DNA of 64,000 nucleotides, from positions 992,001 through 1,056,000 of the forward strand of contig JAWMAR010000578.1 in the NCBI GenBank assembly GCA_036785375.1, in the 5' to 3' direction. Position numbers and translations under genes: made by a program. The notes below the pieces were generated by a model. The model saw nothing but the letters and a program-made list of their open reading frames with translations, was not told the origin of the DNA and did not search any database. Every line of letters starts with the position of its first letter. Within the stretch, counting starts at the first letter, position 1. Positions 1 through 57,319 of this stretch are shown piece by piece. Origin of the DNA: Leucoraja ocellata (taxonomy: Eukaryota).

Positions 1-186
1 CCTTGTCTACTTTGAATTGTTTTCTGCTGTCCGCTTCCATAAATGTCTTCTCGTCCCCTCTCCACCAAGAAACGTCAGCGGTTTCTTTTAATATCGGAAA
101 TTTGCAGAACATGGAATCACTTCTGCCGCTGGAGACCCTCAGGATTGCGGGGAATTGTTCCACTTTGCTCGAAGTTGCTTTTGTCA
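1..186 (-). CDS. Gene A V-domain exon, 5' part (runs off window): ...KVEQFPAILRVSSGRSDSMFCKFPILKETADVSWWRGDEKTFMEADSRKQFKVDK
   Basis: Clear paralog of the V exons of B, C and D (QFP, MFC, VSWWR, KTF.E.DSRK). The homologous acceptor AG reads AC at 188-187; an in-frame alternative AG lies at 179-178. Confidence 0.8.
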
Positions 187-392
187 GTGGCAGAAATAAG
201 TAAATATGATGAAAACATTTGTACATACAGCACCAAGAAAAAGAGCCAATGGATACACAAATACAAAACAATTAGGAAATAATGGTTAGCCAATTGTAGA
301 AACGTTGTAAATTTAATTTACTGTGGCATACTAGTGTAAAATATTGTCAAATATGATTCGCTTAGTGAAATCGGTACAGAAACTAAGCATAC

Positions 393-447
393 CTTGACAA
401 AGCAAAACAAGAAGACCCATGTACCGAACCATTGCTTTCACCGGCAT
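393..447 (-). CDS. Gene A exon 1: signal peptide (MPVKAMVRYMGLLVLLCQ/G)
   Basis: 55-nt ATG..CAAG|gtatgc exon, same length and phase as the leaders of B, C and D, about 200 bp upstream of a V exon. Confidence 0.8.
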
Positions 448-1789
448 ACTGCAAAATAGAAGGGTGTGCATAAGAATAGGTTTTCATAGAATGCCTGAAG
501 CGTGTAACACCAACGCCGTAAATCACATGACTAAGGCATCGTGATGCATTTTGAGTATATTTATGTTTCAGCGAGTATGATCTAGGAAATATGTTTTCTT
601 CGATTTCCTACTCCAAAATGATTTCTCTTCCAGCCATTGTAGGTGCACCGCGTTTGGACAACACATATTGAAATCCATTTACCTCTACCTCATTCTCAAA
701 TTAAGACTTTGTCCTACCGGAGCATAAGATGACAGAGCTGTCAACTACTCAGCCTCGTATATTTCTGTCACAGATTATCCCACCTTGAATGCAGGAGGGT
801 GTGATGACCTTTGAGTTAGTCCCGCTGCGAATTTCTTTCATTTCAGCCAAAAACTCCAAGCCTCAATTGCAGCATTTAAATGAGATACATTACATCAAGT
901 GATGTTGTTGATAAGGATTTGATCATCCACTAGATGGCAATTGGGCGGCGTACCATTAAGAGTTTTTCGCTATTGATTCGGATCGTCTAATTCTTCACAC
1001 AAGGAATTTAGAAAGGGAAGCCCATAGTCAACTGAATCTTTCATTGCATTCTTTTTCGCTTACAATATATAGTGCATTCCTCTGCTACCTTTCTCCGTGG
1101 TACCATATGTGACTATAAGCAAAAATGTTATAACCTCTTTCCATTGTTAAAATTCAGGAATTAACTAGCTCCTTGCTCCCAAGTATTAATCTGTTACATT
1201 CGCAGATATTTGCAACAGCAACTTTCGCGCAAAGGTATTCAAGGGCCAAATGTGCATTACAAAACCCGATTACTGAAGAGAAGGGGACCACATCAACAAA
1301 CAAAAGACGATGCGAGTTTATTAAAGTAAAAGCTTGAATTGTTAGAAATAGAATCGATTATCAAAGAAAAGGAGAAATACGTCCAAGACCACAAAAGACT
1401 TCAGAGAAAAAAATAGAATTGTTTACAGTATGACTGCTAACTTAAAATTGTTGCATTCTTGGAGATTTGAGCACTTGACAACTTGTGATGCCAAATTTTA
1501 AAAGACCAGCATGAGGAAGGTGTATAGTCCATGGAGTTTGTTCCCGGTCAATGCAATGCGCGATGTAACTTTTTAAAAGTTATAATTGTTCAAGAATCAT
1601 CTTTGTAAATGTATTTCCTTTTAGTTATTTCAGGTTCACATTTTCAACACACAAAGAATAGTTATTATGGTAAGATGAATAACAAAACGTGAATCAAAAA
1701 AGGTGACGTGTGAAGGAACATAAGATGATCAAACGTGTGTGCAAACGTAAGAACTTTAAAAGAGGGGGTAGTGGGGAGGGGAGAAGAGG

Positions 1790-3043
1790 GGAGAGGGGGG
1801 ATACGGGGAGAAGGGGAGAAGGGGGGAGAATGGGGGAGAAGGAGTGGAGACACTTTTAAGAAGCCATACAACGTTTAATAAGCCAGAGATACACATATGT
1901 GAAGTTCGGCGGGCATTTAACATTACCGGTGGGTTATCTTTAGTTCTGAAAATTCGTGCTTATGTTTGTTTCCCCCAATGAGTCAATGAAAATGACCGGT
2001 CAGCAAAGGCGATTAACTAAGACTTCCTACGACTACCTCGACTACCTACAACTATATGGTGACCCCACTACGACTGCACCTACGACCACAGGATTATCGA
2101 TTTTCTCCATGGCGGCCAATTTTTGGTCGCAGCAACATTTTGTATGACAACTTGTTCTATTTGATCTTATTTGATTGTGCACGGTGCGTTGATTGCATTC
2201 GTCGAAACAGGGCGGACCACGTGAAGGTTGCAATCTCCCACCCCAAGGAGACTCACCAGAGACAATCAGCGAATATGTGGCGACCATGTGGTGAGCACAG
2301 AGTCTCCTGCACTCGCCAAAAAAAGTCGCCTAAAGGGGCAGTCCCACTGGGGCGACCTAATCTGCGAGTTTAGAAGAGTTTGCCCTCGACTCAAACTCGC
2401 AGCATGGTCGACACGTGGTCCTAGGAGGTCTCTGGAACCATGCCTCAGTTTGGTCGAGGAAACATTTTCAGCATGTTGAAAATTTGTCTTCGGCATGGTT
2501 CCTTTGAACTCGTAGTGCAGTGGAATGGGGTCGCTGTGTAGATATAGGCAGTCGAGGGCAGCCATAGGCAATCTCCTTGGCTGACCGGGCAATTTAATTG
2601 GCTCATTGGCGTTTTATGGGCCAAGGAAAACCGACCGGTAGGTTAAATGCCCGCTAAACTTTATTAAAAAGTTGTCTGGCTTCGTAAAAGTGTCTCCACC
2701 CCCCCCCCCCTCTCCCCTTCTCTCCCCCTCTCTCCCCATCATCCCCCCCCCCCCCCCCCCCCCATCCGCGCTCGCTAAAGGACTTACCGTACACTGTGCC
2801 GTCGTCTTTTACGTTCCTGTTCATCGCGGGTGTGAATTTCAGACTGCGCCCCCCACCCCCGCTTCCCCAGGCCCCCGCTTTTCCGATGTGTGTATGTGCG
2901 GTCGGTCGATCCAGCTCGCGGTTTCATCGCTGACGGTCAATCCAGCTCGAGGTTGTTCAGGAAAGTGCCCTCGAGCTTGAAGGGCGAAGACAGTCGCTGA
3001 AAGGTCGCGTTAGTGGGACAGACCCTTAAGTGGGACAGGCCCT
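1790..3043. mobile_element. PIF/Harbinger-like non-autonomous element (outer), right TIR at 3030-3043
   Basis: Terminal GTGGGACAGGCCCT. Left end not identified; interrupted by a related inner element. Confidence 0.5.
2334..3026. mobile_element. PIF/Harbinger-like MITE nested in the outer element
   Basis: Imperfect TIRs AGGGGCAGTCCCACT.. / ..AGTGGGACAGACCCT flanked by TAA TSDs (2331-2333, 3027-3029). Confidence 0.75.
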
Positions 3044-3149
3044 TATGGGACAGACAGCCTTCCCAGTCTCTCATCATAACTGAAAAATTAATTCCAGGAA
3101 AAAATGTTGAAGTATATATTCTAATTTTATTTCTGGCCAGAGAACAGAA

Positions 3150-7887: not shown

Positions 7888-8022
7888 TCAGTTACACGTC
7901 TTTTTTGAAGTATTCACATCTGCGTACACCGTGTATTTGTTCTGTTTGGATGCTGACGTTTTCTTGGGGTTGTCATGTTGCACAGTTGCGTAGGTCAGCT
8001 TGTCATGTCCACCTCTTTTAGT
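7888..8022 (-). CDS. Gene B terminal cytoplasmic exon: TKRGGHDKLTYATVQHDNPKKTSASKQNKYTVYADVNTSKKTCN*
   Basis: ttactttcgcag acceptor, phase 0. ITIM LTYATV and ITSM-like TVYADV; homologous to 43565-43690. Confidence 0.8.
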   Translation of the reverse strand, partial: TKRGGHDKLTYATVQHDNPKKTSASKQNKYTVYADVNTSKKTCN

Positions 8023-8866: not shown

Positions 8867-8977
8867 CTGTGAATAGGCGACATGTTGTTCTTCTTGTAGA
8901 CCATTTGAAAATCCTTTGCTCTCGCTTAAATTCAGTGTAGCATAGGCAGCGGTATGTTCAATTGGTGCTTGTCTCAC
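8867..8977 (-). CDS. Gene B penultimate cytoplasmic exon: VRQAPIEHTAAYATLNLSESKGFSNGLQEEQHVAYSQ
   Basis: cttttctaatag acceptor, CAG|gtaatg donor, 111 nt phase 0-0, two tyrosine motifs. Confidence 0.75.
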
Positions 8978-11586: not shown

Positions 11587-11630
11587 CGGCTCCCCGTTCG
11601 GACGTATTCCTACAGAGGTTACGTTATGGC
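11587..11630 (-). CDS. Gene B first cytoplasmic exon (44 nt): (G)HNVTSVGIRPNGEP
   Basis: ttcattcctctag acceptor, CCG|gtaggt donor, phase 1 to 0; same length and phase as the gene D exon at 51491-51534. Confidence 0.7.
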
Positions 11631-12275
11631 CTAGAGGAATGAAATAAGAGTTACATAAAAACAACTTGAATTGTAAAGATTGATCTGTAGATTTTGACAT
11701 TATTCTTCTCATTTTAATCAAATTTACTGCAGAAAATAAGAACGATTGCATTTTTAAATATCAGATGGTGCTCAGCAGCACCAATTGCCACAATTATACC
11801 AATACAACGCATCTTGTACTCTTTCGCGATGTTGCGCCCACTGGACCTAAATTTTAACTGAAACTTTAAAATTGTAATGGTTTATGAGGAACCGTGTCCA
11901 TGTCGAAACAGCAATGTAATGTAAACATATGGAGATGTTTGGTTTTGCTCATTGCCACAGAAAGCCACAGTTGTTTTTTCCTCAAAATCGTAATCTTCCA
12001 TTGCATTAATTATCAATCACACTGGATTTGAAAAATTCCTTATATTTGAAAATATATGCATAGGTGATAATTGAATACATCCAATTCCAAGCTGAAATAA
12101 TTGAATTTGAAGATCCATCATATTATCACACACATATATCAAAACCGGCTTCAGAAATGTCTTTACATGTCCATCTACGTTTCCTTTTCTCCTCTGTGAG
12201 CAAACACCATTGACAAATCCATTCTCGTTTTAACCATAGAAATGATTATTGTATGATTATTATCAAGATTCTTAC

Positions 12276-12386
12276 CGTGCCATATCTTTAAGCTGAGTCT
12301 TATCACGATTATAATCAGAAATAAAATTACTGATCCACCTACTGCATATACGATCATCTGTTTGCGATCAATTCCTGATGAAGCAA
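12276..12386 (-). CDS. Gene B TM exon: (V)ASSGIDRKQMIVYAVGGSVILFLIIIVIRLSLKIWH(G)
   Basis: ttttcag acceptor and CACG|gtaaga donor; hydrophobic stretch. The upstream acceptor (exon start 12401) gives V-S-stop. Confidence 0.8.
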
Positions 12387-12906
12387 CTGAAAATTAAGAA
12401 ACTGTAAAGAATTTATACATTTCAGAACAAATATACAAACGGAAGTCAACAAGGCAAATCATTTCGTAGGTGCATTTTAATACCCACATCGGAAAGTTTG
12501 GAAGGTATATCATGAGGCACCAGATGGAAGATAGTAATGGAATCCACAGGACAAACAATTGCCGTTGTATTGTGCCCATGTGTGGAAAGCTGCTTACTGA
12601 CGTTAAACGGAATTTAGGCTTTATCTTCATATATTTAACCAGACAGTAGATATATGCATATCCCAGGACGTTTTTGATCATTACAATCATTATATCAATT
12701 CAGTTTGTCAATTCATCTCACACGGATTTCCTTACAAGAACTGATGGAGTGCAATTCATTTTAAACAGCATGCAAGTGTTGCTTTCATGCAAATACATGC
12801 GAGCCACATTTACCCTTCGCTCCGTGTACGGAAAGCTGTCCAGTTATTAATCTGATCGAATTTGATCTACCGCCCCAATATCATGTGTAACTGGCTCCAG
12901 TCTTAC

Positions 12907-13200
12907 CTTGGCCCAGGGTATAACTGAAACTGGCCGCCACCTTCAGAGAAACATGTGATACCAGACAGGTGTAAATATCTTTGCCCTCCACAGGCTGCGT
13001 TATTTCCAAAGAACTAGTAGCCACAAACAATCCTTCTTCGCTCGTTTTTTTCACAGTTTCGATTCCAGTGCGAATTTCCTCGTTATTTCTTAGCCAGATT
13101 ATTTCTAATTTCTCCGGATAAAAGGCGTCAGTTTTGCACACAAGTTTCCGTGGGGAGCCAAGTCCTTCAGCAGGAACAATTGTCAAGGGAGTTGGGGGAT
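12907..13200 (-). CDS. Gene B C1-set Ig domain exon
   Basis: LVCKTDAFYPEKLEIIWLRN..YTCLVSHVSL: C1 motifs CxxxxFYP, W and YxCxVxH; 294 nt phase 1-1. Confidence 0.9.
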
Positions 13201-15211
13201 CTTAAGCAAAGAAAAAAAAATATCTGTGTTCGCTTTCCATTTCATTGCAAATATTTACATTTTATCTCGCCACCGAGTCGTATTTGTCAATACCAAATTA
13301 TTTAATTTTTAAACTTCCCAGTTTGTCGTTCATTTATACTCCCTTTCCTAGCGGATAACCGGACGAACTCCGCCAAGATACAAAGAGGGTGAATTTAAGG
13401 AGTGCCAACATAATTTAAGGAGTTCCAAAATAAACTCTGTTCTGAATGGACGTTCCCCGGTATCGCGCGAAAGTTTTTGCCAGAAGCCTGCCGTGATTAT
13501 TTAAAAGTGGCCATGTTCGGATCATTCATATGTTGCAAAAGAAATGGAGCCATCATAATCGAAATATAACAGATTTGTATAGTGTGGTGACAGGAAGCGG
13601 TTATACATGAAGATTAATGATGAATCCCGTTAGCACTTTAAGTAGTATATGGATTAAATCTCCTCACCTTGGTCAAAAAGACCCACTTCAACATGTAATC
13701 ACTACTCTACTCTACTCACTCCGACCTGCGCGAGATAACCACATGAGGTGTTGGCGCAGTAATCAACCAGAACCAGAACCAGATATGGGTTTGAAATGCC
13801 GATCACAACCATTTACCTGCATGTGAACCAAGTGCTGGAACACCTACCTTTCTCGCGCATTGAATGCTTTTATTGAAACACCGTGGTATATATTACAAGC
13901 AATCTACGAGCGCACTTATTCTATGTCAGTATGTAGGAAAGAACTACAGAAGCTGGTATAAACCGAACAACAACATCTCTTCGGAGAACGAATGGGTGAC
14001 GTTTCGGATCGAGGTTTGAAGAAGGGTATCGACCCCAAACGTCACTCATTCCTTCTACCCAGAGATGCTGCCTGCCCCGCTGAGTTACTCCAGCATTTTG
14101 TGTCTCTATACAAATCAGTTCCATCTGTTGTGCCAACTTGGCGACAGTGAATCGACATCGTTAGATCGGCGTTAATGATGATAGCTGGCAGAAGCCAAAC
14201 GAGGGAAAAGAACAAGCTCTGTTTCTCGCTGTGCAGATTCTACTCATTTAGGTCTGCACGTAAAAGGCCCTATATTTGGCATTTATTAACGCGAACTCCT
14301 TCCGTACGAGCTGCAGCCGGTGTCTAACTGGACGGGGAGTTGATTGTTGGGTTGCTTTGTCCGTTTATTACAAATCTTTAGAAAGCTTGACTTAATTCAC
14401 TTAATCAGGATTATCTTTAACGATGAAATAAATGTTACTGTTTATTCCCGGACTTTAAATAATTTCAGTTGCGATGTTGTTTACTTCTTTTTTCCCCCGT
14501 ACGGTGCCAAATTGCTTGAATAGACTGAGGTTATGCCTGACAAAATTAGTGTCAAGCGATTTCAAAAAAAAGAAAAAATATTTCATTGAAGTAGCTTGGA
14601 ATCAGCAGCGATGAGTCCCACATGTTGGAATACCAAGGTCCTTGGGTTGCAGCAGCACATTGGTCTTATGAGGTTCTAAAGCTGTCGATGTAGAATTAGA
14701 GGCATGACAGACTCTACCATCGACGTATTAAAATTGCTCCTACTCTCTTTTCTTAGTGATGAGAAACCTGGATATCACACTCCAGCCACTCAAACTAACA
14801 GGAATATTATTTAAACATCTCATTGCAAAACATTTCTAACCTCAGAATGAACTCCTTCCATCTCAGCATTTACCCGCTCTTAGCGATACATCCATCTGGG
14901 AGATTGGCCTAAAATTCGGGACCGCTAAATGAATGGGCTGCGCCCATTCATAGCGGCAATGAAAAGGAGTCTCGCATAGTATCGTACAATGAACAGAATA
15001 ACCCTCAATACCCACGCGTCCCACAAGTGCTACTCGACCTGGTGATTATGTACATTGTGCTTTGTTTCATTTTGAATTACTGGTCCCTGTAATTTAAAAT
15101 TGTTATTACCGGATATTTATCAACAGGCGATTTTTCATATTATCCTCGCGACTAGACTTTACAAATGACATAGAACTGAAAATTGCTTATTTCCCTAACA
15201 CACACACTCAC

Positions 15212-15517
15212 CAAATACGGTGATCAGGCTGCCACTTCCATTCCCGATAATCTGATGCTTGAACTTCACTTGACAGTAATACAGGCCGGAGTCAGCGACA
15301 CGCACATGTTGGAGAGTAAATATTTCCCTTCCAGAATCTATCGTAAATTGTTTTCTACTGTCCGGTTCAAGGAATGTCTTCATGCCGTCCCTCCACCAAT
15401 TAACGCCAATAGTGTCTTTCGATATTGGAAATGTGCAATACATGATAGCATGTTCACCGCCGCCAACGTCCAAGATGGCAGGGAATTGGGACACTCTGGT
15501 CGAATAGACTTCGGTAG
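15212..15517 (-). CDS. Gene B VJ-type V-set Ig domain exon
   Basis: MYC..VNWWR..DSGLYYC..GNGSGSLITV (J-like GxG G strand); 306 nt phase 1-1 with cag/gtgag boundaries. Confidence 0.92.
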
Positions 15518-15710
15518 CTGTCGGGGAAAAAGCAAGAACAATTGAAACATTTGTAAACACTGGACAGAGAAAACAGGAACCAACTGTCGAAAAGCACGAA
15601 ACAACTATAAACCCACGAGGGCCTAATAGATGAACCTAATAGCTCGAAACCAGGTCCGAATTTTCGAAAAATAATACTTAGACCAGAAATGGCACACATT
15701 TTAACTATAC

Positions 15711-15765
15711 CCTGCGTTAGTATGACCAGAAGAGCCATGGACCAAACTCTAACTTTCACCGACAT
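15711..15765 (-). CDS. Gene B signal peptide exon (MSVKVRVWSMALLVILTQ/G)
   Basis: 55 nt, CAGG|gtatag donor, hydrophobic core. Confidence 0.85.
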
Positions 15766-16916
15766 ATTACAAGAATAAATTGCCAACTTGTTGTTAGTTT
15801 ACTCAAAACTTGCTCTGCGGAAAAGGAAATTATGAGTAAATATATGAAACGTGACCGTGACGTAATATATCCCACGACTGTGGCTCGTGCGGCGGGAGAG
15901 GTCATAGTTCGGCCCATTCCCATTGTAACAAAGCCTTCCAATACTTCCTGAAACGTGTTCACAACCTCCTCCCGTAGCATCGAGATTTTTACTCGGAATT
16001 AAATATGCATCAGCTGCCTACTCAGTTAATTGTCACAAATCGTTCCGCGTAGAAGGTAAGGAGTGCATGTGAATATTTAGATGCACAAACGTAAACACCC
16101 ACCTTCCCTTGAATCTCCCTCCCTTCCCAATGGGTGTTGTGCTCTTTCGCTCTTTCGATTATATACATTCAAACAACAATCACCCATTTCGTTTCTTCCT
16201 GTTCAGCCCTCACCATCGCCATCCGCAGCTTTCTATTGATTATGTTTCCATCTGACGTTTTTAACACTAACTCCGGTTGCTATTCCTACAAAACCAAATC
16301 TCCATGCTGGTTTTTGTTAACTAATATTTCTACTATTTACATAAACACAATTGCAGCAATATTCTATGGGGAGTCCAGCAGAAAATTGGCGCCAAGCCGC
16401 GACAGCTAACGTATGAATGAAATCTATGTTTTTTCTTCCGATAATGCCCAGTAGAGCAATCAACTTATGCTGTTGACATCCACACAACCCAGGAGAATAG
16501 GGGCTGTAAATTAATCGAATGGGCCAATATAAATTAGGGAGATTTAAACCAAACTGTTAATCTTATAATTTCCTCCAAAGTATTGTTTTAAAAATCGTAG
16601 AAATGAAGGATTACTTAAAGTTTGGACTACAGGCAAGAAGCCAACGTGGTGAGCGAGGCGGTTTGAACTATTTATGTTTTCCCCGTATCGTGGTTATACT
16701 CACATTCCTCTGCACAAACCAATGATTTTGGCTTCAGAACACACATTAAATTGCACGAGCAGAAACCTGTTGTAGACCAAATGGTTAAGTAATTTTCGTG
16801 TAATTTAAATGTTTGATGCGCCTCACTTAGAGACCTTGTGCCGTTCAATGGAAGGACATAATATTCCAAATATACACAGTAATTCTCTGGATATTTTTTA
16901 AATTACTGAAATCGGG

Positions 16917-17219
16917 CAGGACCGTATCGCAGTAGTAGAGTTGCTGCACTTACAGCGCCAGAGACCTGGGTTCGATCCCGACTGCGAGTGCTGTCTGTAT
17001 GGAGTTTGTACGTTCGTCCCGTGACTAGCTTGGGTTTTCTCTGGGCGCTCCGGTTTCCGCCCACATTCCAAAGACGTACATGTTCGTAGGTTGATTGGCT
17101 TCGGTAAAGATTGCAAATTGCCCCTGTCTTGCAGGATAGTGCTAATGTACGGGGTGATCGCTGGTCGGCGCGGACTCTGTGGGTCGAAGGGCCTGTTTCC
17201 GCGCTGTATCTCTAAACTA
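16917..17219 (+). mobile_element. tRNA-derived V-SINE (HE1-like)
   Basis: B-box-like GGTTCGATCCC, V-domain-like GGAGTTTGTACGTTC..CTCCGGTTTCC..CCACA, CR1-like 3' end; duplicate at ~31373-31674. Confidence 0.8.
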
Positions 17220-18197
17220 TTGCTAAAAATACTGTTTCTGAAAATGGCTTCTATTTGAACTTCCATGTGAGGATTGCGTAATATTCGGGTTTTAAGTCTG
17301 TCCACATTAACCGTTCAAACGAAGAGCTGCAACAAGAACATTCCGGTTTGTGATGCTGGTCTTGAAGATAATGAAGTCTGGACTCAGATTTAAAGCGGCA
17401 CGTTGTTTCTTGTTTAGTGAAGACAGCAGTGTAAAGAAACCAGCGGCAGTTCGAGAAAACCTCAGTACACGGCAAATCTGACAAATTAAGGATTTATGTG
17501 CATGTTTACAAGCTACTGTCAGCGATGAGCTGTTCTGCAATAATGGGCCAATAATAATCTTACAAAATGGATTTGAAGACATTTTATTGTCACATTTTGA
17601 GGTAATGCATCGGTATATTCCCATTGTTTAATAGAAAAAAATATTGTGATACCGCAAGCGACTACTGAAAAAGATCATGTTTGCATTATTAATTTAACTT
17701 CGATTAAATGTTTCCAAGACGGCTCCTATATTTTTAAAGTTTCATTAAATTAGATTCATTTAGTAAACAGCAGGCGCGGAAAGCTTTGGGCAACATAATT
17801 TTGTTTTCCATAACGTTAGACCCTTACATTGTTGATGACCTCATCGCAGATACGTTTTCCAAATATTATTAACAATGTCTGATGGGAATAATTGGTTAGA
17901 TTGCGTTTTTATTCTCCTTTCGACAAGATGTGTTGGATTGCCATTGACAAGAAAATACTGTTTTCTCCCGTTTGGTGGAATTGACTGGAATCCTGCAACA
18001 GGTCAGATTGCGAAATAGAACTAACGTCTCGAGTTGATCATTTCTGTGATAATATAGAAATATTTACTGTTTCTCTTTCTCCACAGATTGTCCTCGACGA
18101 CCTAGAATTCACAATATTTCGTGATTAATTTCAGATTTCAAAGTATCTGCAATCTAGCATTATCCAGTAATTATCTTGCCAGAACTTTTCCAAGTGA

Positions 18198-18497
18198 TCG
18201 CAGCGGTAGAGTTGCTGCCGAACAGCACTTGCAGCGCCAGGGACCCGGGTTCGATCCCGACTACGGGGACTGTCTGTACGGGGTTTGTACGTTCTCCCCG
18301 TGACCGCGTGGGTTTTCTTTCTCCGGTTTCTTCCCACACTCCAAAGTCGTGCAGGCATGTAGGTAAATGGCTTGGTAAATGTAAAACATGTCCCTAGCGT
18401 GGGTAGGATAGTGCTAATATGCGTTGATCGCTTATCGGCGCGGACTCGGTGGGCCGAAGTGCCAGTTTTCGTGCTGCATCTCTAAACTAAATTAAAC
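18198..18497 (+). mobile_element. tRNA-derived V-SINE (HE1-like)
   Basis: Same structure as the SINE at 16917; duplicate at ~32645-32945. Confidence 0.8.
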
Positions 18498-18900
18498 AAA
18501 ACTGGAATTTAGATGTAGACTGAAAATGTAAATGCATTAAACGCATATCCCCGACGGTCATCAATTGCGACATTATGCCAGTCAATCTGCATTCTCCTTA
18601 TCCATTCGAGCGCCCACTAAAGTCTATGGACTTTATAGTTATTGCCAGCAAGTTGCCTCTAATTACAGGCGATATCTTCTTTTTGTAAATACAATCATCA
18701 CAACTTGTCAAATGTTGTATGGAGTACGTACTAAGCGCACCCACATAGGTCAAGTGCACAGGGGTAGTCTTTCCAGTAATCCTCATGGATATATTTCAGC
18801 TCCTCTATGCCGGAGAGGCACCACACGTCTCTGCTCTTCTGAGCAAAAGTGACAACGCGTCAACCATATGAAATACCCGGGACTCCAAGCAGTCAAGAAT

Positions 18901-19167
18901 ATAACCATATAACCATATAACCATATAACAATTACAGCACGGAAACAGGCCATCTCGACCCTTCTAGTCCGTGCCGAACACATAATCCCCCCTAGTCCCA
19001 TATACCTGCGCCCAGACCATAACCCTCCATTCCCTTCCATCCATATAACTATCCAATTTATTTTTAAATGATAAAAACGAACCTGCCTCCACCACCTTCA
19101 CTGGAAGCTCATTCCACACAGCTACCACTCTCTGAGTAAAGACCACACAGCTACCACTCTCTGAGTA
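18901..19167 (-). mobile_element. CR1 (family 2) 3' fragment, specific to unit 1
   Basis: (taaccata)n tail; AAGAAT TSD at 18895-18900 and 19168-19173; empty site at ~33341 in unit 2. Confidence 0.9.
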
Positions 19168-19274
19168 AAGAATGATGAAACAGATAATATTTTTGAATCA
19201 TTTCGTTTCATCTTGACTTATAATGCGTCAGGTAATGGCACATCGTTCCATGCTCTCAGAGAAAGGGTAACATT

Positions 19275-19705
19275 GAACAAGATTGCTCTTTATTCTTTGG
19301 AGCGCAGAAGGTTAAGGGGGGACTTGATAGGTCTTTAAAATTATGAGAGGGATAGACAGAGTTGACGCGGATAAGCTTTTCCCGTTGAGAGTAGCGGAGA
19401 TTCAAACAAGAGGACATGATTTGAGAATTAAGGGACAAATGTTTAGGGGTAACATGAGGGGAAACCTCTTTACTCAGAGAGTGGTAGCTGTGTGGAATGA
19501 GCTTCCAGTGGAAGTGGTGGAGGCAGGTTCGATTTTATCATTTAAAAATAAATTGGATAGGTATACGGACGGCAAAGGAATGGAGGGTTATGGTCTGAGT
19601 GCAGATAGATGGGACTAGGTGAGAGTAAGTGTTCGGCACGGACTAGAAGGGCCGAGATGGCCTGTTTCCGTGCTGTAAATTGTTATATGGTTATATTATA
19701 TAGTT
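19275..19705 (+). mobile_element. CR1 (family 2) 3' fragment shared by both duplication units
   Basis: MRGIDRVD..TRGHDL..FTQRVVAVWNELP; copy at ~33450-33875. Confidence 0.9.
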
Positions 19706-20070
19706 ACATTTAAAAATCAGCCATTTAATTGCCATGAAGAAGTTTACCTCGTATTTATTTTTTCCCCAGAACGAACACGAAATAATTAAGGAAAGACCAA
19801 TAAAGGAAAGAGGGGTCTCAACCCGAAAGGTCACCCATTCCTTCTCTCCAGTGATGCTGCCTGTCCCGCTGTGTTACTCCAGCATTGTGTGCCTTCCTGC
19901 CAAATAATGAAGATTACAGTACAACCTTAGAAATGTATCATTGCCGGAGGCAGACTTTTAAGAAATGGTCTTAAATTAAACTTCTTGTTCTACACTTAAG
20001 TTTCCAAGGTGATAACGCGAGCTGTCGGTGACTTGTTTGTTTCAGATAGGCACAGCGTTCGACCGCAAGC

Positions 20071-20292
20071 CTTTCCATGACGTCGCCATCAGACTCGCGA
20101 GAACAGTTCTATTCTCATGCTGTGTGTTATTTCTATCTTGTCAAGCTAGAAATGCAGTGGTCAGTTAGTTAGTCAGTAGATGATTAGTTAGTCAGTAGAC
20201 GATGGAAAAAACTTAGTTCCGTTCCATCTTTTTTATAGAAACGTTGCAGAAGCTCGCATGGACCCATTCGTGTTTGCGAATTACAAGCAGAA
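20071..20292. promoter_or_regulatory. Paralog-conserved non-coding element upstream of gene B (copy at 34240-34445 upstream of C)
   Basis: ctttccatgacgtcgccatcagactcgcgag..catcttttttatag..gcgaattac aligns with 63840-64000 and 4136-4226. Confidence 0.5.
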
Positions 20293-20623
20293 GTCTAAAA
20301 TTAAATCTGATTGGAAGGGCATAACGCTTCGTCCCAATGGAACAAATAAGAGGCATCTAAAAAGCGCATAACAAGGACGGCGTATACGCATATACATAAT
20401 TTAATTTAAATATGCAGATTTATAATTCGCAGTTGAAGTAGTGAGAATCGAACGTTATTTGCCGCTATTTGCTTTCATCTCCGAAAGCAAATAGATCATA
20501 AAACATACAACAGTTAAACACTGCAACGGGTCTCTCGGACTAGTATGTCTACGCGGAACATGATGCGAAGATAAACTAATCTCCTCTATTTGCATATGAT
20601 GCACATCCCACCATGCCTTATTT

Positions 20624-22265: not shown

Positions 22266-22309
22266 GCTCCAGAAAGCCCCCCACCCCATTGTCCACCAAT
22301 ATTGGTATT

Positions 22310-38086: not shown

Positions 38087-38236
38087 CTACAGCTTCGATT
38101 CCCAGCTTCGCTCCTTCTTTAAAACATTTCCATCTGCATAAGGTACATGTTCCTCTTTCTGGTTAAATGTTACTGCTGATTGGAGTTGAGTAACTGCAAA
38201 TCGACATGATATAACGTAGAATCTATCATCTTTAGT
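38087..38236 (-). pseudogene. Pseudogene E terminal cytoplasmic exon
   Basis: Copy of 24629-24778 lying downstream of the E TM and C1 exons. Confidence 0.55.
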
Positions 38237-38985
38237 CTGTGAAAGTAATTTATATCGGCCATTAGTCAATTACCCTCTGGTGGCACAAAGAATACGATTT
38301 TGAAACAAAATACTACAGTCTCAAAGAGAATGTATATACATTTCAGGATTCATACTAATCCATGAGACTGCACCAACATGCAAACAAATATGGAATTGTT
38401 ATCCGTCACATTTAATGATACACGGGCACGGGATTAAAAGTGCTTCACTGCAAGTTGGGGAACTGCTTCTAATGAGTTGAGAAAACAGTAGTTTATTCTA
38501 AAACTGTATTGCGCGCTACTGCTGGGGTGGATTATTCTGTGTTTTAGTGTTGTTTCGTTGAGTTAGCGATCTTCCAGTGATCTGCCAGTAGCAGATTTTT
38601 TTTTGCCATTCTTCATTAATTTTCTTTCCCTGATTTCACTTAGTGTTGATCTTCGGTGCTACTAATCATTCCAGGCCCATAGAACAACATTAGCTTTCTT
38701 CGTTATTGCCGATCATTTGTATGAACGTAAATGGAATCTGCTTAAGGGGGCAGACGAATAGTTGATTTAAAGTAGCAAACATTTAATATTACGTATTAAA
38801 AATGCTGATAATGAAAAGTACAATTTTAAGATTCGCTGATAGACCGTTTAATCTATATTCTCATGGGGTAAATTCTACGATGAACCTGCCTGCACAATTG
38901 TCAGGAAATCAACGGTCGCTAGGAAATAGAGTTGTTCATATTGTCCTTGGGCTGAAATCATCCAACATTGCGTACTCTACTTATC

Positions 38986-39615
38986 ATAGAAACATAGAAA
39001 CATAGAAATTAGGTGCAGGGGTAGGCCATTCGGCCCTTCGAGCCTGCACCGCCATTCAATATGATCATGGCTGATCATCCAACTCAGTATCCCGTACCTG
39101 CCTTCTCTCCATACCCCCTGATCCCCTTAGCCACAAGGGCCACATCTAACTCCCTCTTAAATATAGCCAATGAACTGGCCTCAACTACCCTCTGTGGCAG
39201 AGAGTTCCAGAGATTCACCATTCTCTGCGTGAAAAAAGTTCTTCTCATCTCGGTTTTAAAGGATTTCCCCTTTATCCTTAAGCTGTGACCCCTTGTCCTG
39301 GACTTCCCTAAGATCGGGAACAATCTTCCTGCATCTAGCCTGTCCAACCCCTTAAGAATTTTGTAAGTTTCTATAAGATCCCCTCTCAATCTTCTAAATT
39401 CTAGAGAGTATAAACCAAGTCTATCCAGTCTTTCTTCATAAGACAGTCCTGACATCCCAGGAATCAGTCTGGTGAACCGTCTCTGCACTCCCTCTATGGC
39501 AATAATGTCCTTCCTCAGATTTGGAGACCAAAACTGTACACAATACTCCAGGTGTGGTCTCACCAAGAACCTGTACAACTGCAGTAGAACCTCTCTGCTC
39601 CTATACTCAAATCCT
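38986..39615 (-). mobile_element. CR1 (family 1) 3' fragment, specific to unit 2
   Basis: (catagaaa)n tail; TTATC TSD (38981-38985, 39622-39626); empty site at ~25536. Confidence 0.92.
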
Positions 39616-40090
39616 GAAAAATTATCGAGACCACACACAAGATTAGAAGTTGTTCAACCAGAGCTGAACACACGTCTCGGCATCTGCATACAATGGTGTC
39701 TGTTCTTGTGCTTCTAGTGCGTGGTGGTGGAAAGATTGGTGGAAACAGGGCCGCGACGTGAACGCTCCTTCCTTGACCCCATTGCATACTTAGTAGATTG
39801 AAAGTGTTATCACTGCACTCTGCTTAATATCCGTCGGCTTCGGCACCACTACCGAATTTCGGTGAATTCAGTAACCGATGGAGACAACAAAAATAAACGA
39901 CGATTGAAACATTGACATGGGAAGATGTAAGATTTATATCTTGAGATTTATTTTTTGTCATTGTTAATGGTCAGTTTTATTCTCAATTGTTTTATTGTTT
40001 TGCAATCGAATAGCATTTACTGCCCTTGTTTTTTTTTAACCACCATTATGATTAAGACCGAGAATACCGTAAGATGTGTATAATTCTCAC

Positions 40091-40189
40091 AATTTTGTGC
40101 CTTTAATTGGAGCCTTATCAAGATAATGACCAAAACTAAAACTGCCAAGACACCCACTGCGCATCCGATAATTAGGATTTTATCTGCAT
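40091..40189 (-). pseudogene. Pseudogene E TM exon: (D)ADKILIIGCAVGVLAVLVLVIILIRLQLKAQN
   Basis: 99-nt hydrophobic exon about 0.8 kb downstream of the E C1 pseudo-exon. Confidence 0.7.
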
Positions 40190-40305
40190 CTTATGGATCA
40201 AGAGAGAAACAGGGGAAATGTGAACGACATAATATATAGAAATATATACACATTTAGGAATTTAGCGATAACATTTGTGATTTTGAAACATTGATCTCTC
40301 ATTAC

Positions 40306-40997: not shown

Positions 40998-41521
40998 CTT
41001 TTTTGACGGTGTAGCTGAGAGCTGCTGGCACCTCAAGGGAAACATGATATACCAAGCAGGTGTAAACTCTCTGCCACAGAGGGTAGTTGAGGCCAGTTCA
41101 TTGGCTATATTTAAGAGGGAGTTAGATGTGGCCCTAGTGGCCAAGGGGATCAGAGGGTATGGAGAGAAGGCAGGTACGGGATACTGAGTTTGATGATCAG
41201 CCATGATCATATTAAATGGCGGTGCAGGCTGGAAGGGCCGAATGGCCTACTCCTGCACCTAATTTCTATGTTTCTATGTTTCTATGTTTAAACGGCGTCG
41301 CCTCAAGCAAGTTTAATTCCTTCCAAAAAACTGGAAACCTCATACAATCCTTCTGCGCTTCTATTTTTTTACCGTTTCTATTCCGGTCAGAATTTCTTCG
41401 TTATTTCTCCGCCAGGAGATTTCTATTTTTTCCGGATAAAAGCTCGCCGTTTTACACACAAGTTTCCGAGACTGCGATGAAGTTCCTTTAACCGGGATGA
41501 TTTTCAACGGAGTTGGGGTAG
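40998..41521 (-). pseudogene. Pseudogene E C1 exon (frameshift, stop, CR1 insertion)
   Basis: TPTPLKII..LVCKTASFYPEKIEISW.. frameshift ..GLYEVSSFLEGIKLA*GDAV[CR1]YTCLVYHVPLEVPAALSYTVKK|gtaag. Confidence 0.85.
41068..41288 (+). mobile_element. CR1 (family 1) 3' fragment inserted in the E C1 exon
   Basis: TAAAC TSD (41063-41067, 41289-41293); removing it restores DAVYTC. Confidence 0.9.
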
Positions 41522-43564: not shown

Positions 43565-43690
43565 TTACCCCTTTGAAATATTTATATCTGCGTAGACTGG
43601 GTGTTCGTTCTTGGGTTTAGGTGCTGATTTAATTGATTTGGAAAACTGCAGAGCAGCGTAAGTAGGCTTGTCAGCTTCGCTTCCTTTAGT
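43565..43690 (-). CDS. Gene D terminal cytoplasmic exon: TKGSEADKPTYAALQFSKSIKSAPKPKNEHPVYADINISKG*
   Basis: gactttcacag acceptor; homologous to the B terminal exon; two YxxL/I motifs. Confidence 0.75.
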   Translation of the reverse strand, partial: TKGSEADKPTYAALQFSKSIKSAPKPKNEHPVYADINISKG

Positions 43691-56008: not shown

Positions 56009-56036
56009 GACGTTTCGGGTCGAGACCCTTCTTCAG
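56009..56036 (-). ncRNA. Minimal hammerhead-ribozyme-like core (consensus-intact)
   Basis: Reverse complement reads CTGAAGA-a-GGGTC-tc-GACCC-GAAAC-GTC. Confidence 0.55.
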
Positions 56037-56752
56037 TCTGGAGATGCTGCCTGTCCCGCCGAGTAACTCCAGCGTTTTTTGTCTATCTTTATTACATCCA
56101 AATCATGAGAGCTCCCTTTATTCACACGTTTCCTGACTTTAAGGATAAAACTAATAGATTTCTGAAAATTAGTTATAACAAATACTGGGTAGACAATTTG
56201 TAGCGGTTGCGTCAAAAAGGGTAAGATTGTGTGTGGACTGTGGGTGGACACAGTTCTGGGGAGGTTGTAGCCACAGTTGGCCTGGAATGGTGACTTTTCA
56301 TTATACATAAGAACAGACCCAGACTCAATGTATTAAAATGATTCCCGTGAGGAAAAAGCCGCCATACTTCCCACAGTCCAGATTAAATATCCAAGTGGCT
56401 TGAGCATCTTCACTGAAAAACAATGTGGTCACTGAGCACCGTGGGAATGATGAAGAGTGAATCTGAATCGTGGGCGATAGCAGCGCGACTACAGAAGGAC
56501 AAAGGAAAAGGCCCCTGGAAGCACGAAAAACGAGAACAACCCTCCCTCGCCACACACATGCTGCCCGATCAGCTAATTATTTCCAGACATTTCAGATTTC
56601 AAGTCGGCGGAGTGGTTTGAATTCATAACATAAAATACAGTTATTAGTAATCATCCAGTTTTAACCCAGCGATAAAATGTGATGTTATTCACATTAGAGA
56701 GCATAATTTATACTATAGAGAGCTTACGTTCTCTCCGTCATGGGATACTTAC

Positions 56753-57058
56753 CAATTACAGTCAGCCTGGAGCCAGCTCCATCTCCGATAGATTGCTGCT
56801 GATGTTTCACTTTACAATAATAAACCCCGGAGTCCGCTACATTTGCATTCAGGAGAACAAAATCCCCACTGCCCTTTTTGGTAGAAATTATTTTTCTGCT
56901 GTCTGGTTCTATAAATGTCTTCTCTCCCCATCTCCACCAAGAAACATCAAGAGTAACTTGTTGTATTGAGAATGTGCAGAACATGGACGCATTGCCTCCT
57001 CTGTGGACTGTCAGCTCTTTCGGGAATTGGTCCACTTTGGTCGAAGTTACTTCGTTGG
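56753..57058 (-). CDS. Gene D VJ-type V-set Ig domain exon
   Basis: MFC..VSWWR..DSGVYYC..GDGAGSRLTV; 306 nt with cag/gtaag boundaries. Confidence 0.92.
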
Positions 57059-57264
57059 CTGCCAGAAATTAAGGAAACACACTGAAAACAGTTGCACAAA
57101 CTGGACAAGGAAAATGAATCAAGAGTTGAAAATTACAACAGTAAATTAGAATTAGCGACAAGCGAGCTGGAGAAGCACTGTAACTAAATTCACAGTGGGC
57201 AACTAAATGGAGTATTCTAAAACAGAATTGAATATGATGGACCGGCACATATATCTAAAAGTAC

Positions 57265-57319
57265 CTTGCCAAACTGTCACCAGAAGGGCCATGTACCGAA
57301 ATGATGCTTCCACTGTCAT
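57265..57319 (-). CDS. Gene D signal peptide exon (MTVEASFRYMALLVTVWQ/G)
   Basis: 55 nt, CAAG|gtactt donor. Confidence 0.85.

What the first reader, a model, noticed from the sequence alone, without database searches (positions are those of the whole stretch)
1..57319. Cluster of non-rearranging VJ-C1 inhibitory immunoreceptors in a cartilaginous fish
Seen: four genes (A-D) and one pseudogene share a 55-nt leader, a 306-nt V exon ending in a J-like G-x-G-S-x-(L/I)-T-V strand, a C1 exon, an uncharged TM and tyrosine-motif tail exons, with no RSS. Known: V(J)+C1 is the antigen-receptor module and is rare among non-rearranging IgSF members (SIRP, tapasin, B7-H6, PRARP); NKp30 has a similar germline VJ domain. 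Inference: this is a lineage-expanded family with an antigen-receptor-like ectodomain and a SIRPalpha-like tail. It is a candidate relic of the pre-RAG receptor or a skate/shark paired-receptor family, evolving by birth and death.
Basis: partly seen in the sequence, partly recalled or inferred. Interest (0 to 1): 0.85.

Follow-up and report, generated by a model that had tools for sequence, protein, structure and literature searches.

The report
Shark/ray VJ-C1 inhibitory receptor gene cluster
This stretch of a cartilaginous-fish genome holds a tandem cluster of immune-receptor-like genes whose outer part resembles one chain of a T-cell receptor or antibody but needs no gene rearrangement, and whose tail carries inhibitory signalling motifs; relatives occur throughout sharks, rays and chimaeras, but no expression was seen in the RNA sampled.

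Summary
On the minus strand lie four genes and one pseudogene. They share a 55-nt leader (4 of 4), a 306-nt V exon ending in a J-like G-x-G-S-x-(L/I)-T-V strand and a splice donor (3 of 3 complete V exons), a C1-set exon (3 of 3) and an uncharged TM exon. No RSS adjoins any V exon.

The tails are less uniform than reported. Only gene B gives a complete seven-exon, 351-codon model with canonical ITIM and ITSM motifs. Gene C is a duplication chimera with two TM exons and a degenerate tail. Gene D has non-canonical motifs and its middle tail exons were not found. Gene A is cut by the window edge.

Relatives are V-C1-TM-tail proteins across Chondrichthyes. NCBI names them inconsistently (SIRP-alpha-like, B7-H6-like, Ig-lambda-like). 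Elsewhere the family includes members with a charged TM and a short tail.

The V fold is closest to IgNAR V, TCR V-alpha, PD-1 and CD79b. The ectodomain sequence is no closer to SIRP than to Ig or UrIg2.

Four RNA runs gave zero reads on B/C exons. Orthology to SIRP or PRARP could not be tested.

First-stage notes, all unchecked, report similar clusters on at least seven other pieces of this genome.

The parts
393..447 (-). Gene A leader exon (55 nt)
   Evidence: ATG..G|gt, 18 codons plus 1 nt; 56% identical to the leader of P0031
1..177 (-). Gene A V exon, 5' part only, cut by the window start
   Evidence: Open in phase 1. It is 60% identical to Mobula P0028 V. The canonical acceptor reads CAC and the next AG lies 9 nt downstream.
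15711..15765 (-). Gene B leader exon (55 nt)
15212..15517 (-). Gene B V(J) exon (306 nt)
   Evidence: AG/GT borders, phase 1-1. Pfam V-set 27.7 bits (cut-off 26) and I-set 27.5 bits. AF2 model has pLDDT 91.3.
12907..13200 (-). Gene B C1 exon (294 nt)
   Evidence: Pfam C1-set 51 bits, E 1.9e-13; YTCLVSH present
12276..12386 (-). Gene B TM exon, TM1 type (111 nt)
   Evidence: Hydrophobic core IVYAVGGSVILFLIIIVI with no charged residue; AG/GT borders, phase 1-1
11587..11630 (-). Gene B cytoplasmic exon 1 (44 nt), inferred
   Evidence: Polypyrimidine tract plus AG, donor GTAGGT, phase 1 to 0. The peptide resembles the post-TM segment of homologues. No RNA support.
8867..8977 (-). Gene B cytoplasmic exon 2 (111 nt)
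   Evidence: tblastn to P0038 (54% over 35 aa, E 1.9e-7) and to P0056; AG/GT borders, phase 0-0
7888..8022 (-). Gene B last coding exon: ITIM LTYATV and ITSM-like TVYADV, then stop
   Evidence: The seven exons give 1056 nt, 351 codons, no internal stop, and AG/GT at every splice junction (the six acceptors and six donors).
30186..30240 (-). Gene C leader exon
   Evidence: Identical to the B leader
29687..29992 (-). Gene C V(J) exon (306 nt)
   Evidence: 92.8% nt and 84% aa identity to B
27372..27665 (-). Gene C C1 exon
   Evidence: Pfam C1-set 46.7 bits
26741..26851 (-). Gene C TM1 exon
26003..26101 (-). Gene C second TM exon (TM2 type, like that of D and the pseudogene)
   Evidence: 65.5% identical over 29 aa to the TM of Heterodontus P0056
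24629..24778 (-). Gene C last exon with degenerate motifs (RFYVIS, VPYADG)
40998..41521 (-). Pseudogene C1 exon, broken
   Evidence: In-frame stop/frameshift, and a 245-nt repeat insertion (41320..41076) relative to B
40091..40189 (-). Pseudogene TM2-type exon (coordinates approximate)
38087..38236 (-). Pseudogene last exon, same degenerate form as in C
57265..57319 (-). Gene D leader exon (55 nt)
56753..57058 (-). Gene D V(J) exon (306 nt)
   Evidence: Pfam V-set 36.9 bits; 66% identical to Heterodontus P0152
54218..54508 (-). Gene D C1 exon (291 nt)
   Evidence: Pfam C1-set 49.9 bits
52157..52255 (-). Gene D TM exon (99 nt)
43565..43690 (-). Gene D last exon (PTYAAL, PVYADI)
   Evidence: tblastx against the B last exon, 46% over 50 aa, E 1.9e-26 summed
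11815..40273 (.). Two copies of a tandem unit of about 14.5 kb (11815-26186 and 26314-40273)
   Evidence: Self-blastn, 92.8-95.6% identity in blocks

Best explanation
The window holds part of a large chondrichthyan multigene family of non-rearranging type I immunoreceptors. Each gene has a split leader and one exon encoding a complete V domain with its own J-like G strand. It then has one C1-set exon, a TM exon, and two or three small cytoplasmic exons.

The V domain is a short V type without a C'' strand. Like IgNAR V, PD-1 or CD79b, it presumably binds a ligand through its BC and FG loops. The C1 domain serves as stalk and probably as a pairing surface.

In the inhibitory form (gene B here), the tail tyrosines (LTYATV as ITIM, TVYADV as ITSM-like) would be phosphorylated after ligand engagement. 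They would then recruit SH2 phosphatases, as SIRP-alpha, PD-1 and LILRB do. Family members in other species with a basic TM residue and a short tail would be the activating partners.

The cluster evolves by birth and death. Three old lineages are present (A, B/C, D). A recent 14.5-kb tandem duplication fused the 5' half of a B-type gene to the 3' half of an older gene, producing chimera C and leaving pseudogene P.

Shown: exons, phases, domains, homologues and duplication history. Inferred: expression, ligand binding, signalling and pairing.
For: - Exon anatomy and phases.
- Gene B reads through seven exons as 351 codons without a stop, with AG/GT at every splice junction (the six acceptors and six donors).
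- Pfam C1-set scores 46.7-51 bits and V-set 27.7-36.9 bits, in 3 of 3 exons each.
- The AF2 model of the B V exon has pLDDT 91.3. Its strands are A, A', B, C, D, E, F and a G strand split at the GxG. C' is a single residue and there is no C''.
- Structural neighbours: by Foldseek, VNAR, CD79b, TCR V-alpha and PD-1 (TMq 0.74-0.81). By VIA-align, skate IgNAR V at Z 14.9, with TCR, CD79b, PD-1 and NKp30 at Z 12.7-13.9.
- Homologues: a V profile found 1031 proteins at E<=1e-3. Of 30 representatives looked up, 24 are named chondrichthyan proteins, 5 are multi-V proteins of bony vertebrates without a C1 hallmark, and 1 is unnamed.
- Full-length searches gave 34 of 2138 and 49 of 7253 candidates. All are chondrichthyan except one unnamed entry, and they include Callorhinchus.
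- G93 and G95 are at least 90% conserved and V100 is invariant in 28 aligned rows.
- Purifying selection on C1 after the duplication: pN/pS 0.25, against 0.75 for V.
- In the V tree, all window genes fall in one 32-row clade (SH-aLRT 90). B/C is sister to a myliobatiform clade (96). A groups with Narcine and Mobula (97).
- Census of TM and tail types.
Against: - Four RNA runs from three studies (X6, X9, X10, X13) were laid at 90% likeness. About 1.1-1.9 billion letters were read per run. Depth was zero on the V, C1, TM1, TM2 and last exons of gene C. At that threshold the equivalent B exons are covered too. On the leader bin, only X10 showed 0.11.
- Only one of four genes (B) has a complete model, and its 44-nt exon is inferred.
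- D lacks detectable middle tail exons and has proline at -2 of both motifs.
- C needs an unseen phase 1-to-0 exon.
- Signalling and ligand are inferred from motif knowledge only.
- The RNA runs carry a different organism code (B) from the DNA holders (A), and no single-copy stretch confirmed that they come from the same species.
Confidence: 0.7

Rival explanations
1. These are the cartilaginous-fish orthologues of the SIRP family (SIRP-alpha inhibitory, SIRP-beta activating) that have lost one C1 domain. They would bind a CD47-like ligand.
For: NCBI names many members 'tyrosine-protein phosphatase non-receptor type substrate 1-like'. The language-model atlas places homologue P0038 nearest clusters named PTPNS1-like (0.97) and SIRP-alpha (0.96). 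Tail motifs of the form xTYAxL and xEYAx(L/V/I) resemble those I recall for SIRP-alpha. Paired inhibitory and activating forms exist in the family.
Against: With the B V exon as query, no SIRP chain is among the best 60 PDB sequences, whereas VNAR, NKp30, PD-1 and amphioxus VJ-C2 are. With the B C1 exon, none is among the best 60, which are IgM, MR1/beta-2m, IgE, UrIg2 and MHC II beta. With the family profile, SIRP-alpha ranks 10th (5.2e-28), below UrIg2 (1.6e-36) and Ig heavy chains. SIRP is absent from the top structural matches. The family has one C1, not two. The two-C1 models P0098 and P0175 carry near-identical repeats, which indicates recent exon duplication. NCBI names are inconsistent.
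Confidence: 0.2
2. [quoted passage not shown] 2019, J Immunol). As I recall, that is a non-rearranging VJ + C + TM + ITIM gene pair of non-mammalian vertebrates.
For: The architecture is the same, by my recall of that paper. I saw only its title in a reference list and one-line mentions in PMC10751288 and PMC11599192, which class PRARP among germline VJ genes.
Against: No PRARP sequence could be obtained, so nothing was tested. None of the 83 hits of the two full-length searches is from a bony vertebrate, but that tool only reaches word-sharing relatives. PRARP is a pair of genes, whereas this is a family of dozens per genome.
Confidence: 0.15
3. The copies in this window are decaying relics without function, even if the family is functional elsewhere.
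For: Zero RNA reads on B/C exons. P is broken. C is a chimera with two TM exons and lost motifs. The middle tail exons of D were not found, and its 8.4-kb intron is filled with LINEs. The canonical V acceptor of A is mutated.
Against: B is intact over seven exons. The V and C1 exons of B, C and D are all open with intact splice sites. C1 pN/pS between B and C is 0.25. The RNA sampling was shallow and the tissues are unknown.
Confidence: 0.2

Closest known systems
SIRP family (SIRP-alpha/beta/gamma)
   Same: Germline V domain with a J-like strand, followed by C1-set domain(s). Single TM. Tail with several YxxL/V/I motifs. Activating relatives have a basic TM residue. It is the nearest named cluster in the protein atlas for a full-length homologue.
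   Different: One C1 instead of two. The V is short, without a C'' strand. Ectodomain sequence and fold are not closer to SIRP than to Ig, UrIg2, VNAR or PD-1. Orthology, synteny and CD47 binding are untested.
PRARP (Fu et al. 2019; recalled, paper not held)
   Same: Non-rearranging VJ + C domain + TM + ITIM tail, the same domain order (by recall).
   Different: As far as I recall, it was described in bony vertebrates as a linked gene pair. Here there is a large expanding family across Chondrichthyes. No sequence comparison was possible.
UrIg / UrIg2 of elasmobranchs (PMC12227049; sections 4 and 7 read)
   Same: Non-rearranging single-exon VJ with a split leader, followed by C1-type domains, in cartilaginous fish. 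UrIg2 (PDB 9dmx) is the best non-antibody match of the family profile, and its V-C1 aligns colinearly.
   Different: UrIg has three C domains and is secreted by liver. UrIg2 has nine C domains plus TM. Neither that paper's text nor its abstract mentions ITIM tails, gene clusters or activating partners.
NKp30 / NCR3
   Same: Germline VJ-type V domain. Human NKp30 aligns over residues 9-99 of the B V exon (E 0.017) and structurally at Z 12.7.
   Different: As I recall, NKp30 has no C1 domain and is activating through a charged TM.
Teleost NITR
   Same: Clustered, rapidly duplicating receptors with a germline V(J) and ITIM or charged-TM variants (recalled).
   Different: The second domain of NITR is not C1-set (recalled). 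No NITR appeared among the looked-up hits.
TCR / Ig light chain
   Same: V(J) + one C1 + TM is the domain order of a TCR chain. TCR V-alpha is among the top structural matches.
   Different: No RSS, with V and J in one exon. ITIM tail instead of a charged TM with a short tail.

Membership tests
Rearranging antigen receptor (Ig/TCR) gene segment | V segment ends in an RSS (heptamer, 12- or 23-nt spacer, nonamer) and J is separate | tested here: not met
   In 3 of 3 complete V exons the J-like strand is in the same exon and is followed by a GT donor. The loose RSS scan found nothing next to V exons.
C1-set Ig domain | Match to Pfam PF07654 above the gathering score, plus the YxCxVxH hallmark | tested here: met
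   46.7-51 bits against a cut-off of 21, in 3 of 3 exons; YTCLVSH in 3 of 3
V-set Ig domain of VJ type | V-set match, GxG bulge in the G strand, and C' and C'' strands | tested here: inconclusive
   V-set scores 27.7-36.9 bits (cut-off 26), but I-set scores about equally. GxG is present and the G strand is split in the model. C' is a single residue and there is no C''. Best structural matches are VNAR, which also lacks C'', mixed with I-set domains.
SIRP family | V + two C1-set domains | tested here: not met
   One C1 exon per gene in the window. Two-C1 models in other species are near-identical internal repeats.
SIRP family | Ectodomain closest in sequence to SIRPs | tested here: inconclusive
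   The atlas says SIRP-alpha-like for homologue P0038. PDB searches rank Ig and UrIg2 above SIRP-alpha. No tree with SIRPs could be built.
SIRP family | Cytoplasmic ITIM-type tyrosines (alpha form), or basic TM residue with a short tail (beta form) | tested here: met
   B has LTYATV and TVYADV. Across the family, 28 proteins have an uncharged TM with motifs and 18 a charged TM without, out of 90 in a crude census. In the window only B is canonical.
SIRP family | Binds CD47; lies in conserved synteny with SIRPA neighbours | not testable with these tools
PRARP | Sequence orthology to chicken PRARP genes | not tested
   The paper and its sequences were not obtainable
Paired inhibitory/activating receptor family | Similar ectodomains on ITIM tails and on charged-TM short tails within one cluster | tested here: inconclusive
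   Met for the family in other species. No charged-TM gene lies in this window. A first-stage note claims one 5.9 kb beyond the window end; this is unchecked.

The most novel reading that the evidence does not exclude
This is an undescribed, Chondrichthyes-wide family that is neither SIRP nor PRARP. It would be a surviving non-rearranging sister of the antigen-receptor chain, with the same V(J)-C1-TM order as a TCR chain and an IgNAR/TCR-like V fold. It would have been retained as a germline paired inhibitory/activating system. That would make it the closest living model of the receptor whose V exon was split by the RAG transposon.
Probability: 0.15. Interest if true: 0.85.

Novelty: new member of a known kind. 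Interest (0 to 1): 0.5.

Why it matters
Germline-joined VJ + C1 genes are actively sought as clues to the receptor that existed before RAG-mediated rearrangement (UrIg and UrIg2; PMC12227049).

This family has the exact domain order of a TCR chain. It is present from chimaeras to rays, is multigenic, and has inhibitory and activating forms. Public annotation gives it half a dozen unrelated names.

A proper description would add a major innate receptor system to shark immunology. It would need phylogeny against SIRP, PRARP, NCR3, UrIg and TCR, plus chromosomal position relative to the MHC and its paralogons, expressing cell type and ligand. It would also test whether such receptors descend from the antigen-receptor precursor or from a SIRP-like gene.

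For this window alone the gain is modest: one intact gene, one chimera, one incomplete gene, one cut gene and one pseudogene, with no expression seen.

Tried and rejected
**Expression.** The single read-laying run covered the whole of gene C (24600-30300) at 90% likeness, so that B reads would also lay. All exons had zero depth. Reads fell only on repeats at 25.4-25.7k, 26281-26316 and 28.2-28.6k. Genes D and A were not tested.

**Transcript contigs for homologues.** The short Logan proteins P0018, P0032, P0035 and P0186 run on past the exon end into unrelated sequence, as an ORF read through into the intron would. They are therefore probably not transcripts.

**Relatives in bony vertebrates.** Two homologous-protein searches returned only chondrichthyan proteins. 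Human SIRP-alpha scores 101 bits against the same profile in PDB, so it was simply not a candidate of that word-based tool. The blank therefore means little.

Trees against SIRP, NCR3, PRARP, XMIV, MDIR, NITR and TCR/IgL were not built, because no tool delivered those sequences as stored proteins.

**Middle tail exons of D, C and P.** Searches by blastn, tblastx, tblastn with homologue tails, and a splice-aware scan found nothing convincing. A relic 'QEQTPLYADAET' open stretch lies at 25627..25584 in C and has a copy in P.

**V-C1-C1 models as evidence for SIRP.** Rejected. The two C1 domains of P0098 and P0175 are near-identical repeats, and P0180 looks like two genes fused.

**Positive selection on V.** V divergence between B and C is 22 of 306 nt. 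This exceeds the adjacent introns (Poisson P 0.0005) but not the unit-wide 5.3% (P 0.09). The nonsynonymous/synonymous contrast with C1 is not significant (Fisher P 0.22). It is suggestive only.

**Literature.** Searches used UrIg; PRARP; PRARP + immunoglobulin; nonrearranging/ITIM/shark/C1 domain; SIRP/cartilaginous fish/VJ domain; antigen receptor precursor; and NCR3/shark/NKp30. None found a paper in the held library describing this family. Fu 2019 (PRARP), Flajnik 2023 (UrIg, J Immunol) and the shark NCR3 paper are not held. Supplements were closed, so prior description cannot be excluded.

Full report
**What is in the window**

The window has no N runs. It is rich in non-LTR retrotransposons. 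Reverse-transcriptase ORFs lie at 10036-11154, 48244-49983 and 60361-61698, and an endonuclease ORF at 61937-62686.

Six-frame ORFs and tblastn with the window's own Ig-like ORFs show V-like exons on the minus strand at about 0.1k, 15.3k, 29.8k and 56.9k. C1-like exons lie at about 13.0k, 27.5k, 41.2k (interrupted) and 54.3k.

Reading the sequence gives exact borders.
- The leader is 55 nt in 4 of 4 genes.
- The V exon is 306 nt in 3 of 3 complete copies.
- The C1 exon is 294, 294 and 291 nt.
- TM exons are 111 or 99 nt.
- All internal exons are in phase 1-1 with AG/GT borders.

The V exons end in GNGSGSLITVF, RNGSGSRITVF and GDGAGSRLTVI, directly before the donor. The J-like strand is therefore germline-joined.

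A loose RSS scan of both strands found four matches against 0.76 expected (maximum 4 in 50 shuffles). They sit at two positions and their duplicates, in intergenic DNA at 22.5k/23.1k and 36.7k/37.3k. None adjoins a V exon.

**Domains**

Pfam places the second exon firmly in C1-set (46.7-51 bits, cut-off 21). The first exon just passes V-set (27.7-36.9 bits, cut-off 26), with I-set scoring about equally.

I folded the B V exon with an alignment of 28 rows. These were 3 window exons and 25 public homologues chosen from those fetched. The model has mean pLDDT 91.3. It shows strands A, A', B, C, D, E, F and a G strand split at the GxG. C' is a single residue and there is no C''.

Foldseek against PDB ranks shark IgNAR V, CD79b, TCR V-alpha and PD-1 first (TMq 0.74-0.81). 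VIA-align against 48,161 representative chains puts a skate IgNAR V first (Z 14.9, rmsd 2.1 over 96 residues). NCAM and titin I-set domains, TCR, CD79b, PD-1 and NKp30 follow within about 2 Z units. SIRP is in neither list.

By sequence against PDB, the B V exon hits:
- I-set domains of Robo and contactin;
- amphioxus IgVJ-C2 (E 1.2e-6);
- VNAR (about 1e-3);
- PD-1 (0.008);
- NKp30 (0.017).

The B C1 exon hits IgM C-mu (3.3e-13), MR1/beta-2m fusions, IgE, UrIg2 (2e-10), light chains and MHC II beta.

**Tails and complete models**

tblastx between the regions downstream of each gene found a shared last exon. Its acceptor needs phase 0, whereas the TM exons leave phase 1. At least one further exon is therefore required.

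Public full-length homologues, laid on the window by tblastn, revealed a 111-nt exon in gene B. It lies at 8977..8867 and reads VRQAPIEHTAAYATLNL...VAYSQ. A splice-aware scan found a 44-nt exon at 11630..11587 with a good acceptor and a GTAGGT donor. It restores the phase and resembles the post-TM peptide of homologues.

With these, gene B reads as 1056 nt and 351 codons without a stop, with AG/GT at every splice junction (the six acceptors and six donors). The join was made only inside a script to count codons.

The last exons differ:

| Gene | Motif 1 | Motif 2 |
|---|---|---|
| B | LTYATV | TVYADV |
| D | PTYAAL | PVYADI |
| C and pseudogene | RFYVIS | VPYADG |

For D, C and P no middle tail exon could be found.

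**Duplication history**

Self-comparison shows a tandem unit of about 14.5 kb: 11815-26186 matches 26314-40273 at 92.8-95.6% in blocks. Each unit runs from a TM2-type exon and degenerate last exon, through intergenic DNA, to the leader, V, C1 and TM1 exons of the next gene.

Gene C is therefore a chimera. Its 5' half is a copy of B, ending with TM1. Its 3' half (TM2 plus the degenerate last exon) comes from an older gene. That older gene's own remnant is the pseudogene, whose C1 is 75% identical to that of B, broken, and without a V.

Between B and C:

| Region | Result |
|---|---|
| Leader | identical |
| V exon | 22 of 306 nt differ; 16 nonsynonymous, 6 synonymous; pN/pS 0.75 |
| C1 exon | 9 of 294 nt differ; pN/pS 0.25 |
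| Adjacent introns | 96.2-96.9% identical |
| C1-TM1 intron | 93.7% identical |
| Upstream 3 kb | 95.1% identical |

The V excess is significant against the adjacent introns only (P 0.0005, against P 0.09 for the unit-wide rate). The V-versus-C1 contrast is not significant (P 0.22). Most of the 16 amino-acid changes lie at or beside the loops of the model. They fall at positions 34-37, 43, 53, 63-65 and 86-91.

**Relatives**

A profile of the three V exons was searched against 1.84 billion representatives. It found 1031 proteins at E<=1e-3, 247 at <=1e-10 and 36 at <=1e-30. The top of the list is inflated by giant multi-Ig proteins.

The single-stretch, full-length matches are proteins of 250-400 residues with leader, V, C1 (YxCxVxH), TM and tail. 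I looked up 30 representatives.
- 24 are NCBI models from Chondrichthyes.
  - Batoids: Mobula hypostoma and M. birostris, Narcine, Amblyraja, Hemitrygon.
  - Sharks: Heterodontus, Heptranchias, Mustelus, Scyliorhinus, Chiloscyllium.
  - Holocephalan: Callorhinchus.
- 5 are multi-V proteins without a C1 hallmark, from gecko, turtle, lungfish, frog and Astyanax.
- 1 is an unnamed Logan ORF.

NCBI's names are inconsistent. They include SIRP-alpha-like (PTPNS1-like), NCR3 ligand 1-like, Ig lambda-like, tapasin-related-like, MHC-like, TCR beta-like, PD-L1-like and 'uncharacterized'.

Full-length searches used Mobula P0038 and then a 16-member family profile. They returned 34 of 2138 and 49 of 7253 candidates. 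All are chondrichthyan except one unnamed entry. These searches added Hypanus and Pristis to the batoid species list. Because that tool needs shared words, the absence of bony-vertebrate hits is not evidence of absence.

The best identity of any stored protein to a window exon is 60-77%. The source species or a near relative is therefore not among the fetched proteins.

**Family trees**

I chose 64 stored proteins that had a species name (59 chondrichthyan family members and 5 bony-vertebrate outgroups). A row was kept in the V tree if its V match spanned at least about three quarters of the profile; 63 passed.

The V tree has 67 rows: 4 window exons, 58 chondrichthyan proteins and 5 outgroups, with 106 columns (quick IQ-TREE, SH-aLRT). 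It puts all window genes in one 32-row clade (support 90) that holds both sharks and batoids.
- B/C is sister to a Mobula/Hemitrygon/Hypanus clade (96).
- A groups with Narcine and Mobula P0028 (97).
- D is unresolved.

For the C1 tree, 58 chondrichthyan proteins had a C1 match spanning at least about three quarters of the profile; outgroups were excluded. The tree has 62 rows, including the pseudogene read with X at its breaks. All four window C1 exons fall in one 26-row clade (98). The pseudogene is nearest a Pristis protein at 77%.

Three lineages in the cluster are thus older than the split among batoids, and the window species is probably a batoid. Few columns limit both trees.

**Paired forms**

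I ran a crude census of the 90 stored proteins of up to 520 residues that carry a C1 hallmark. Isoforms and near-duplicates are included. TM was taken from a hydropathy window and motifs from a regular expression.

| Class | Count (of 90) |
|---|---|
| Uncharged TM with tail motifs | 28 |
| Charged (mostly arginine) TM without motifs | 18 |
| Uncharged TM without motifs | 18 |
| Charged TM with a motif | 7 |
| No clear TM | 16 |
| No TM region | 3 |

The family therefore contains inhibitory-type and activating-type members elsewhere. No charged TM occurs in this window.

**Comparison with known families**

*UrIg and UrIg2* (PMC12227049; outline and sections 4 and 7 read, plus passages found by term search) are non-rearranging VJ genes of elasmobranchs. 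UrIg has three C domains and is secreted. UrIg2 has nine C domains and a TM. Both are expressed mainly in liver or gill. The architecture differs from the genes here.

*PRARP* is cited as a germline VJ gene in PMC10751288 and PMC11599192 (passages only). The original paper is not held, and its VJ-C-TM-ITIM architecture is my recollection.

*SIRP.*
- The family profile scores UrIg2 at 1.6e-36, with V and C1 aligned colinearly. It scores SIRP-alpha at 5.2e-28, rank 10 of more than 10,000.
- P0038 alone scores UrIg2 at 3.4e-14 and SIRP-alpha at 1.8e-13.
- The protein atlas puts P0038 nearest clusters named PTPNS1-like (0.97) and SIRP-alpha (0.96).
- It puts the B V exon alone nearest generic V-set, 'putative antigen receptor', PD-1 and TIGIT clusters (0.93-0.94).

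The SIRP likeness therefore lies in overall architecture and tail, not in the ectodomain sequence or fold.

**Expression**

The look-up of sequencing runs listed three DNA-like holders (organism A) and RNA runs found only by species label (organism B).

I laid four RNA runs from three studies on 24600-30300 at 90% likeness. Between 1120 and 1934 million letters were read per run, which is 5-25% of each. Depth was zero in every bin that holds an exon of gene C. The one exception was 0.11 in a single run on the leader bin.

All laid reads sat on three repeat stretches. One of them is the duplication junction at 26281-26316.

Tissues are unknown. D and A were not tested. The identity of organism B with the window's species could not be checked on single-copy sequence. 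The result is therefore negative but weak.

**Verdict**

The genes belong to a large family found throughout Chondrichthyes. That family is present in public annotation under inconsistent names. It works, by inference, like SIRP or LILR-type paired receptors, while carrying a TCR-chain-like V(J)-C1 ectodomain.

Whether it is an offshoot of SIRP or PRARP, or an independent relic of the antigen-receptor precursor, remains open, because the decisive trees and synteny could not be done here.

I found no paper describing the family in the held library. Key subscription papers and all supplements were out of reach.

First-stage notes of this scan, all unchecked, report similar clusters on at least seven other pieces of this genome and one 5.9 kb beyond this window.

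Noticed in passing
window 24629-30240 (-): Gene C is a duplication chimera with two tandem in-phase TM exons (26851..26741 and 26101..26003). Including both would give two membrane spans. The tail behind them has lost both tyrosine motifs.
   Followed up: partly
window 12386-12403 and 26851-26868 (-): A second AG lies 15 nt upstream of the TM1 acceptor in both B and C (ctttacag|TTTCTTAATTTTCAG|). Using it would add Val-Ser-stop after C1 and predict a secreted V-C1 form. There is no RNA evidence either way.
   Followed up: partly
window 26281-26316: The junction between the two 14.5-kb units lies on a short high-copy repeat tail. RNA reads from all four runs pile up there (depth 460-940) with loose ends on both sides. 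The same motif begins the insertion in the pseudogene C1 (about 41290).
   Followed up: partly
window 25364-25745: There is moderate RNA read depth (up to about 50) with the same mismatches in all runs, so the reads come from other copies elsewhere. The stretch holds an open relic resembling a tail exon (QEQTPLYADAET, 25627..25584), with a copy at 39708..39661.
   Followed up: partly
window 22463-22500 (-) and 23116-23143 (+); duplicates at 36665 and 37274: Two loose RSS-like matches sit about 600 nt apart, pointing away from each other, in intergenic DNA. One has a heptamer with 1 mismatch and a 22-nt spacer. The other has a 12-nt spacer and a nonamer with 2 mismatches. The count (4, or 2 independent) is at the upper edge of the shuffles (mean 0.76, maximum 4), so this is probably chance.
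   Followed up: partly
window 48241-49983, 60358-62686, 10033-11154 (-): LINE copies are present. One has a 580-aa open RT ORF inside the 8.4-kb intron of gene D. One has endonuclease and RT ORFs upstream of the cluster. One is a truncated RT inside the TM-to-tail intron of gene B. The copies at 9930-11158, 38985-39615 and 48138-49378 are 94-99% identical to each other, so they are recent insertions.
   Followed up: yes
stored proteins P0098 (Amblyraja), P0175 (Chiloscyllium), P0180 (Callorhinchus): Public gene models with two C1 domains carry near-identical repeats of one C1. P0180 repeats V and C1 like two fused neighbouring genes. These are likely recent exon duplications or model artefacts, not a SIRP-like d2/d3.
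   Followed up: partly
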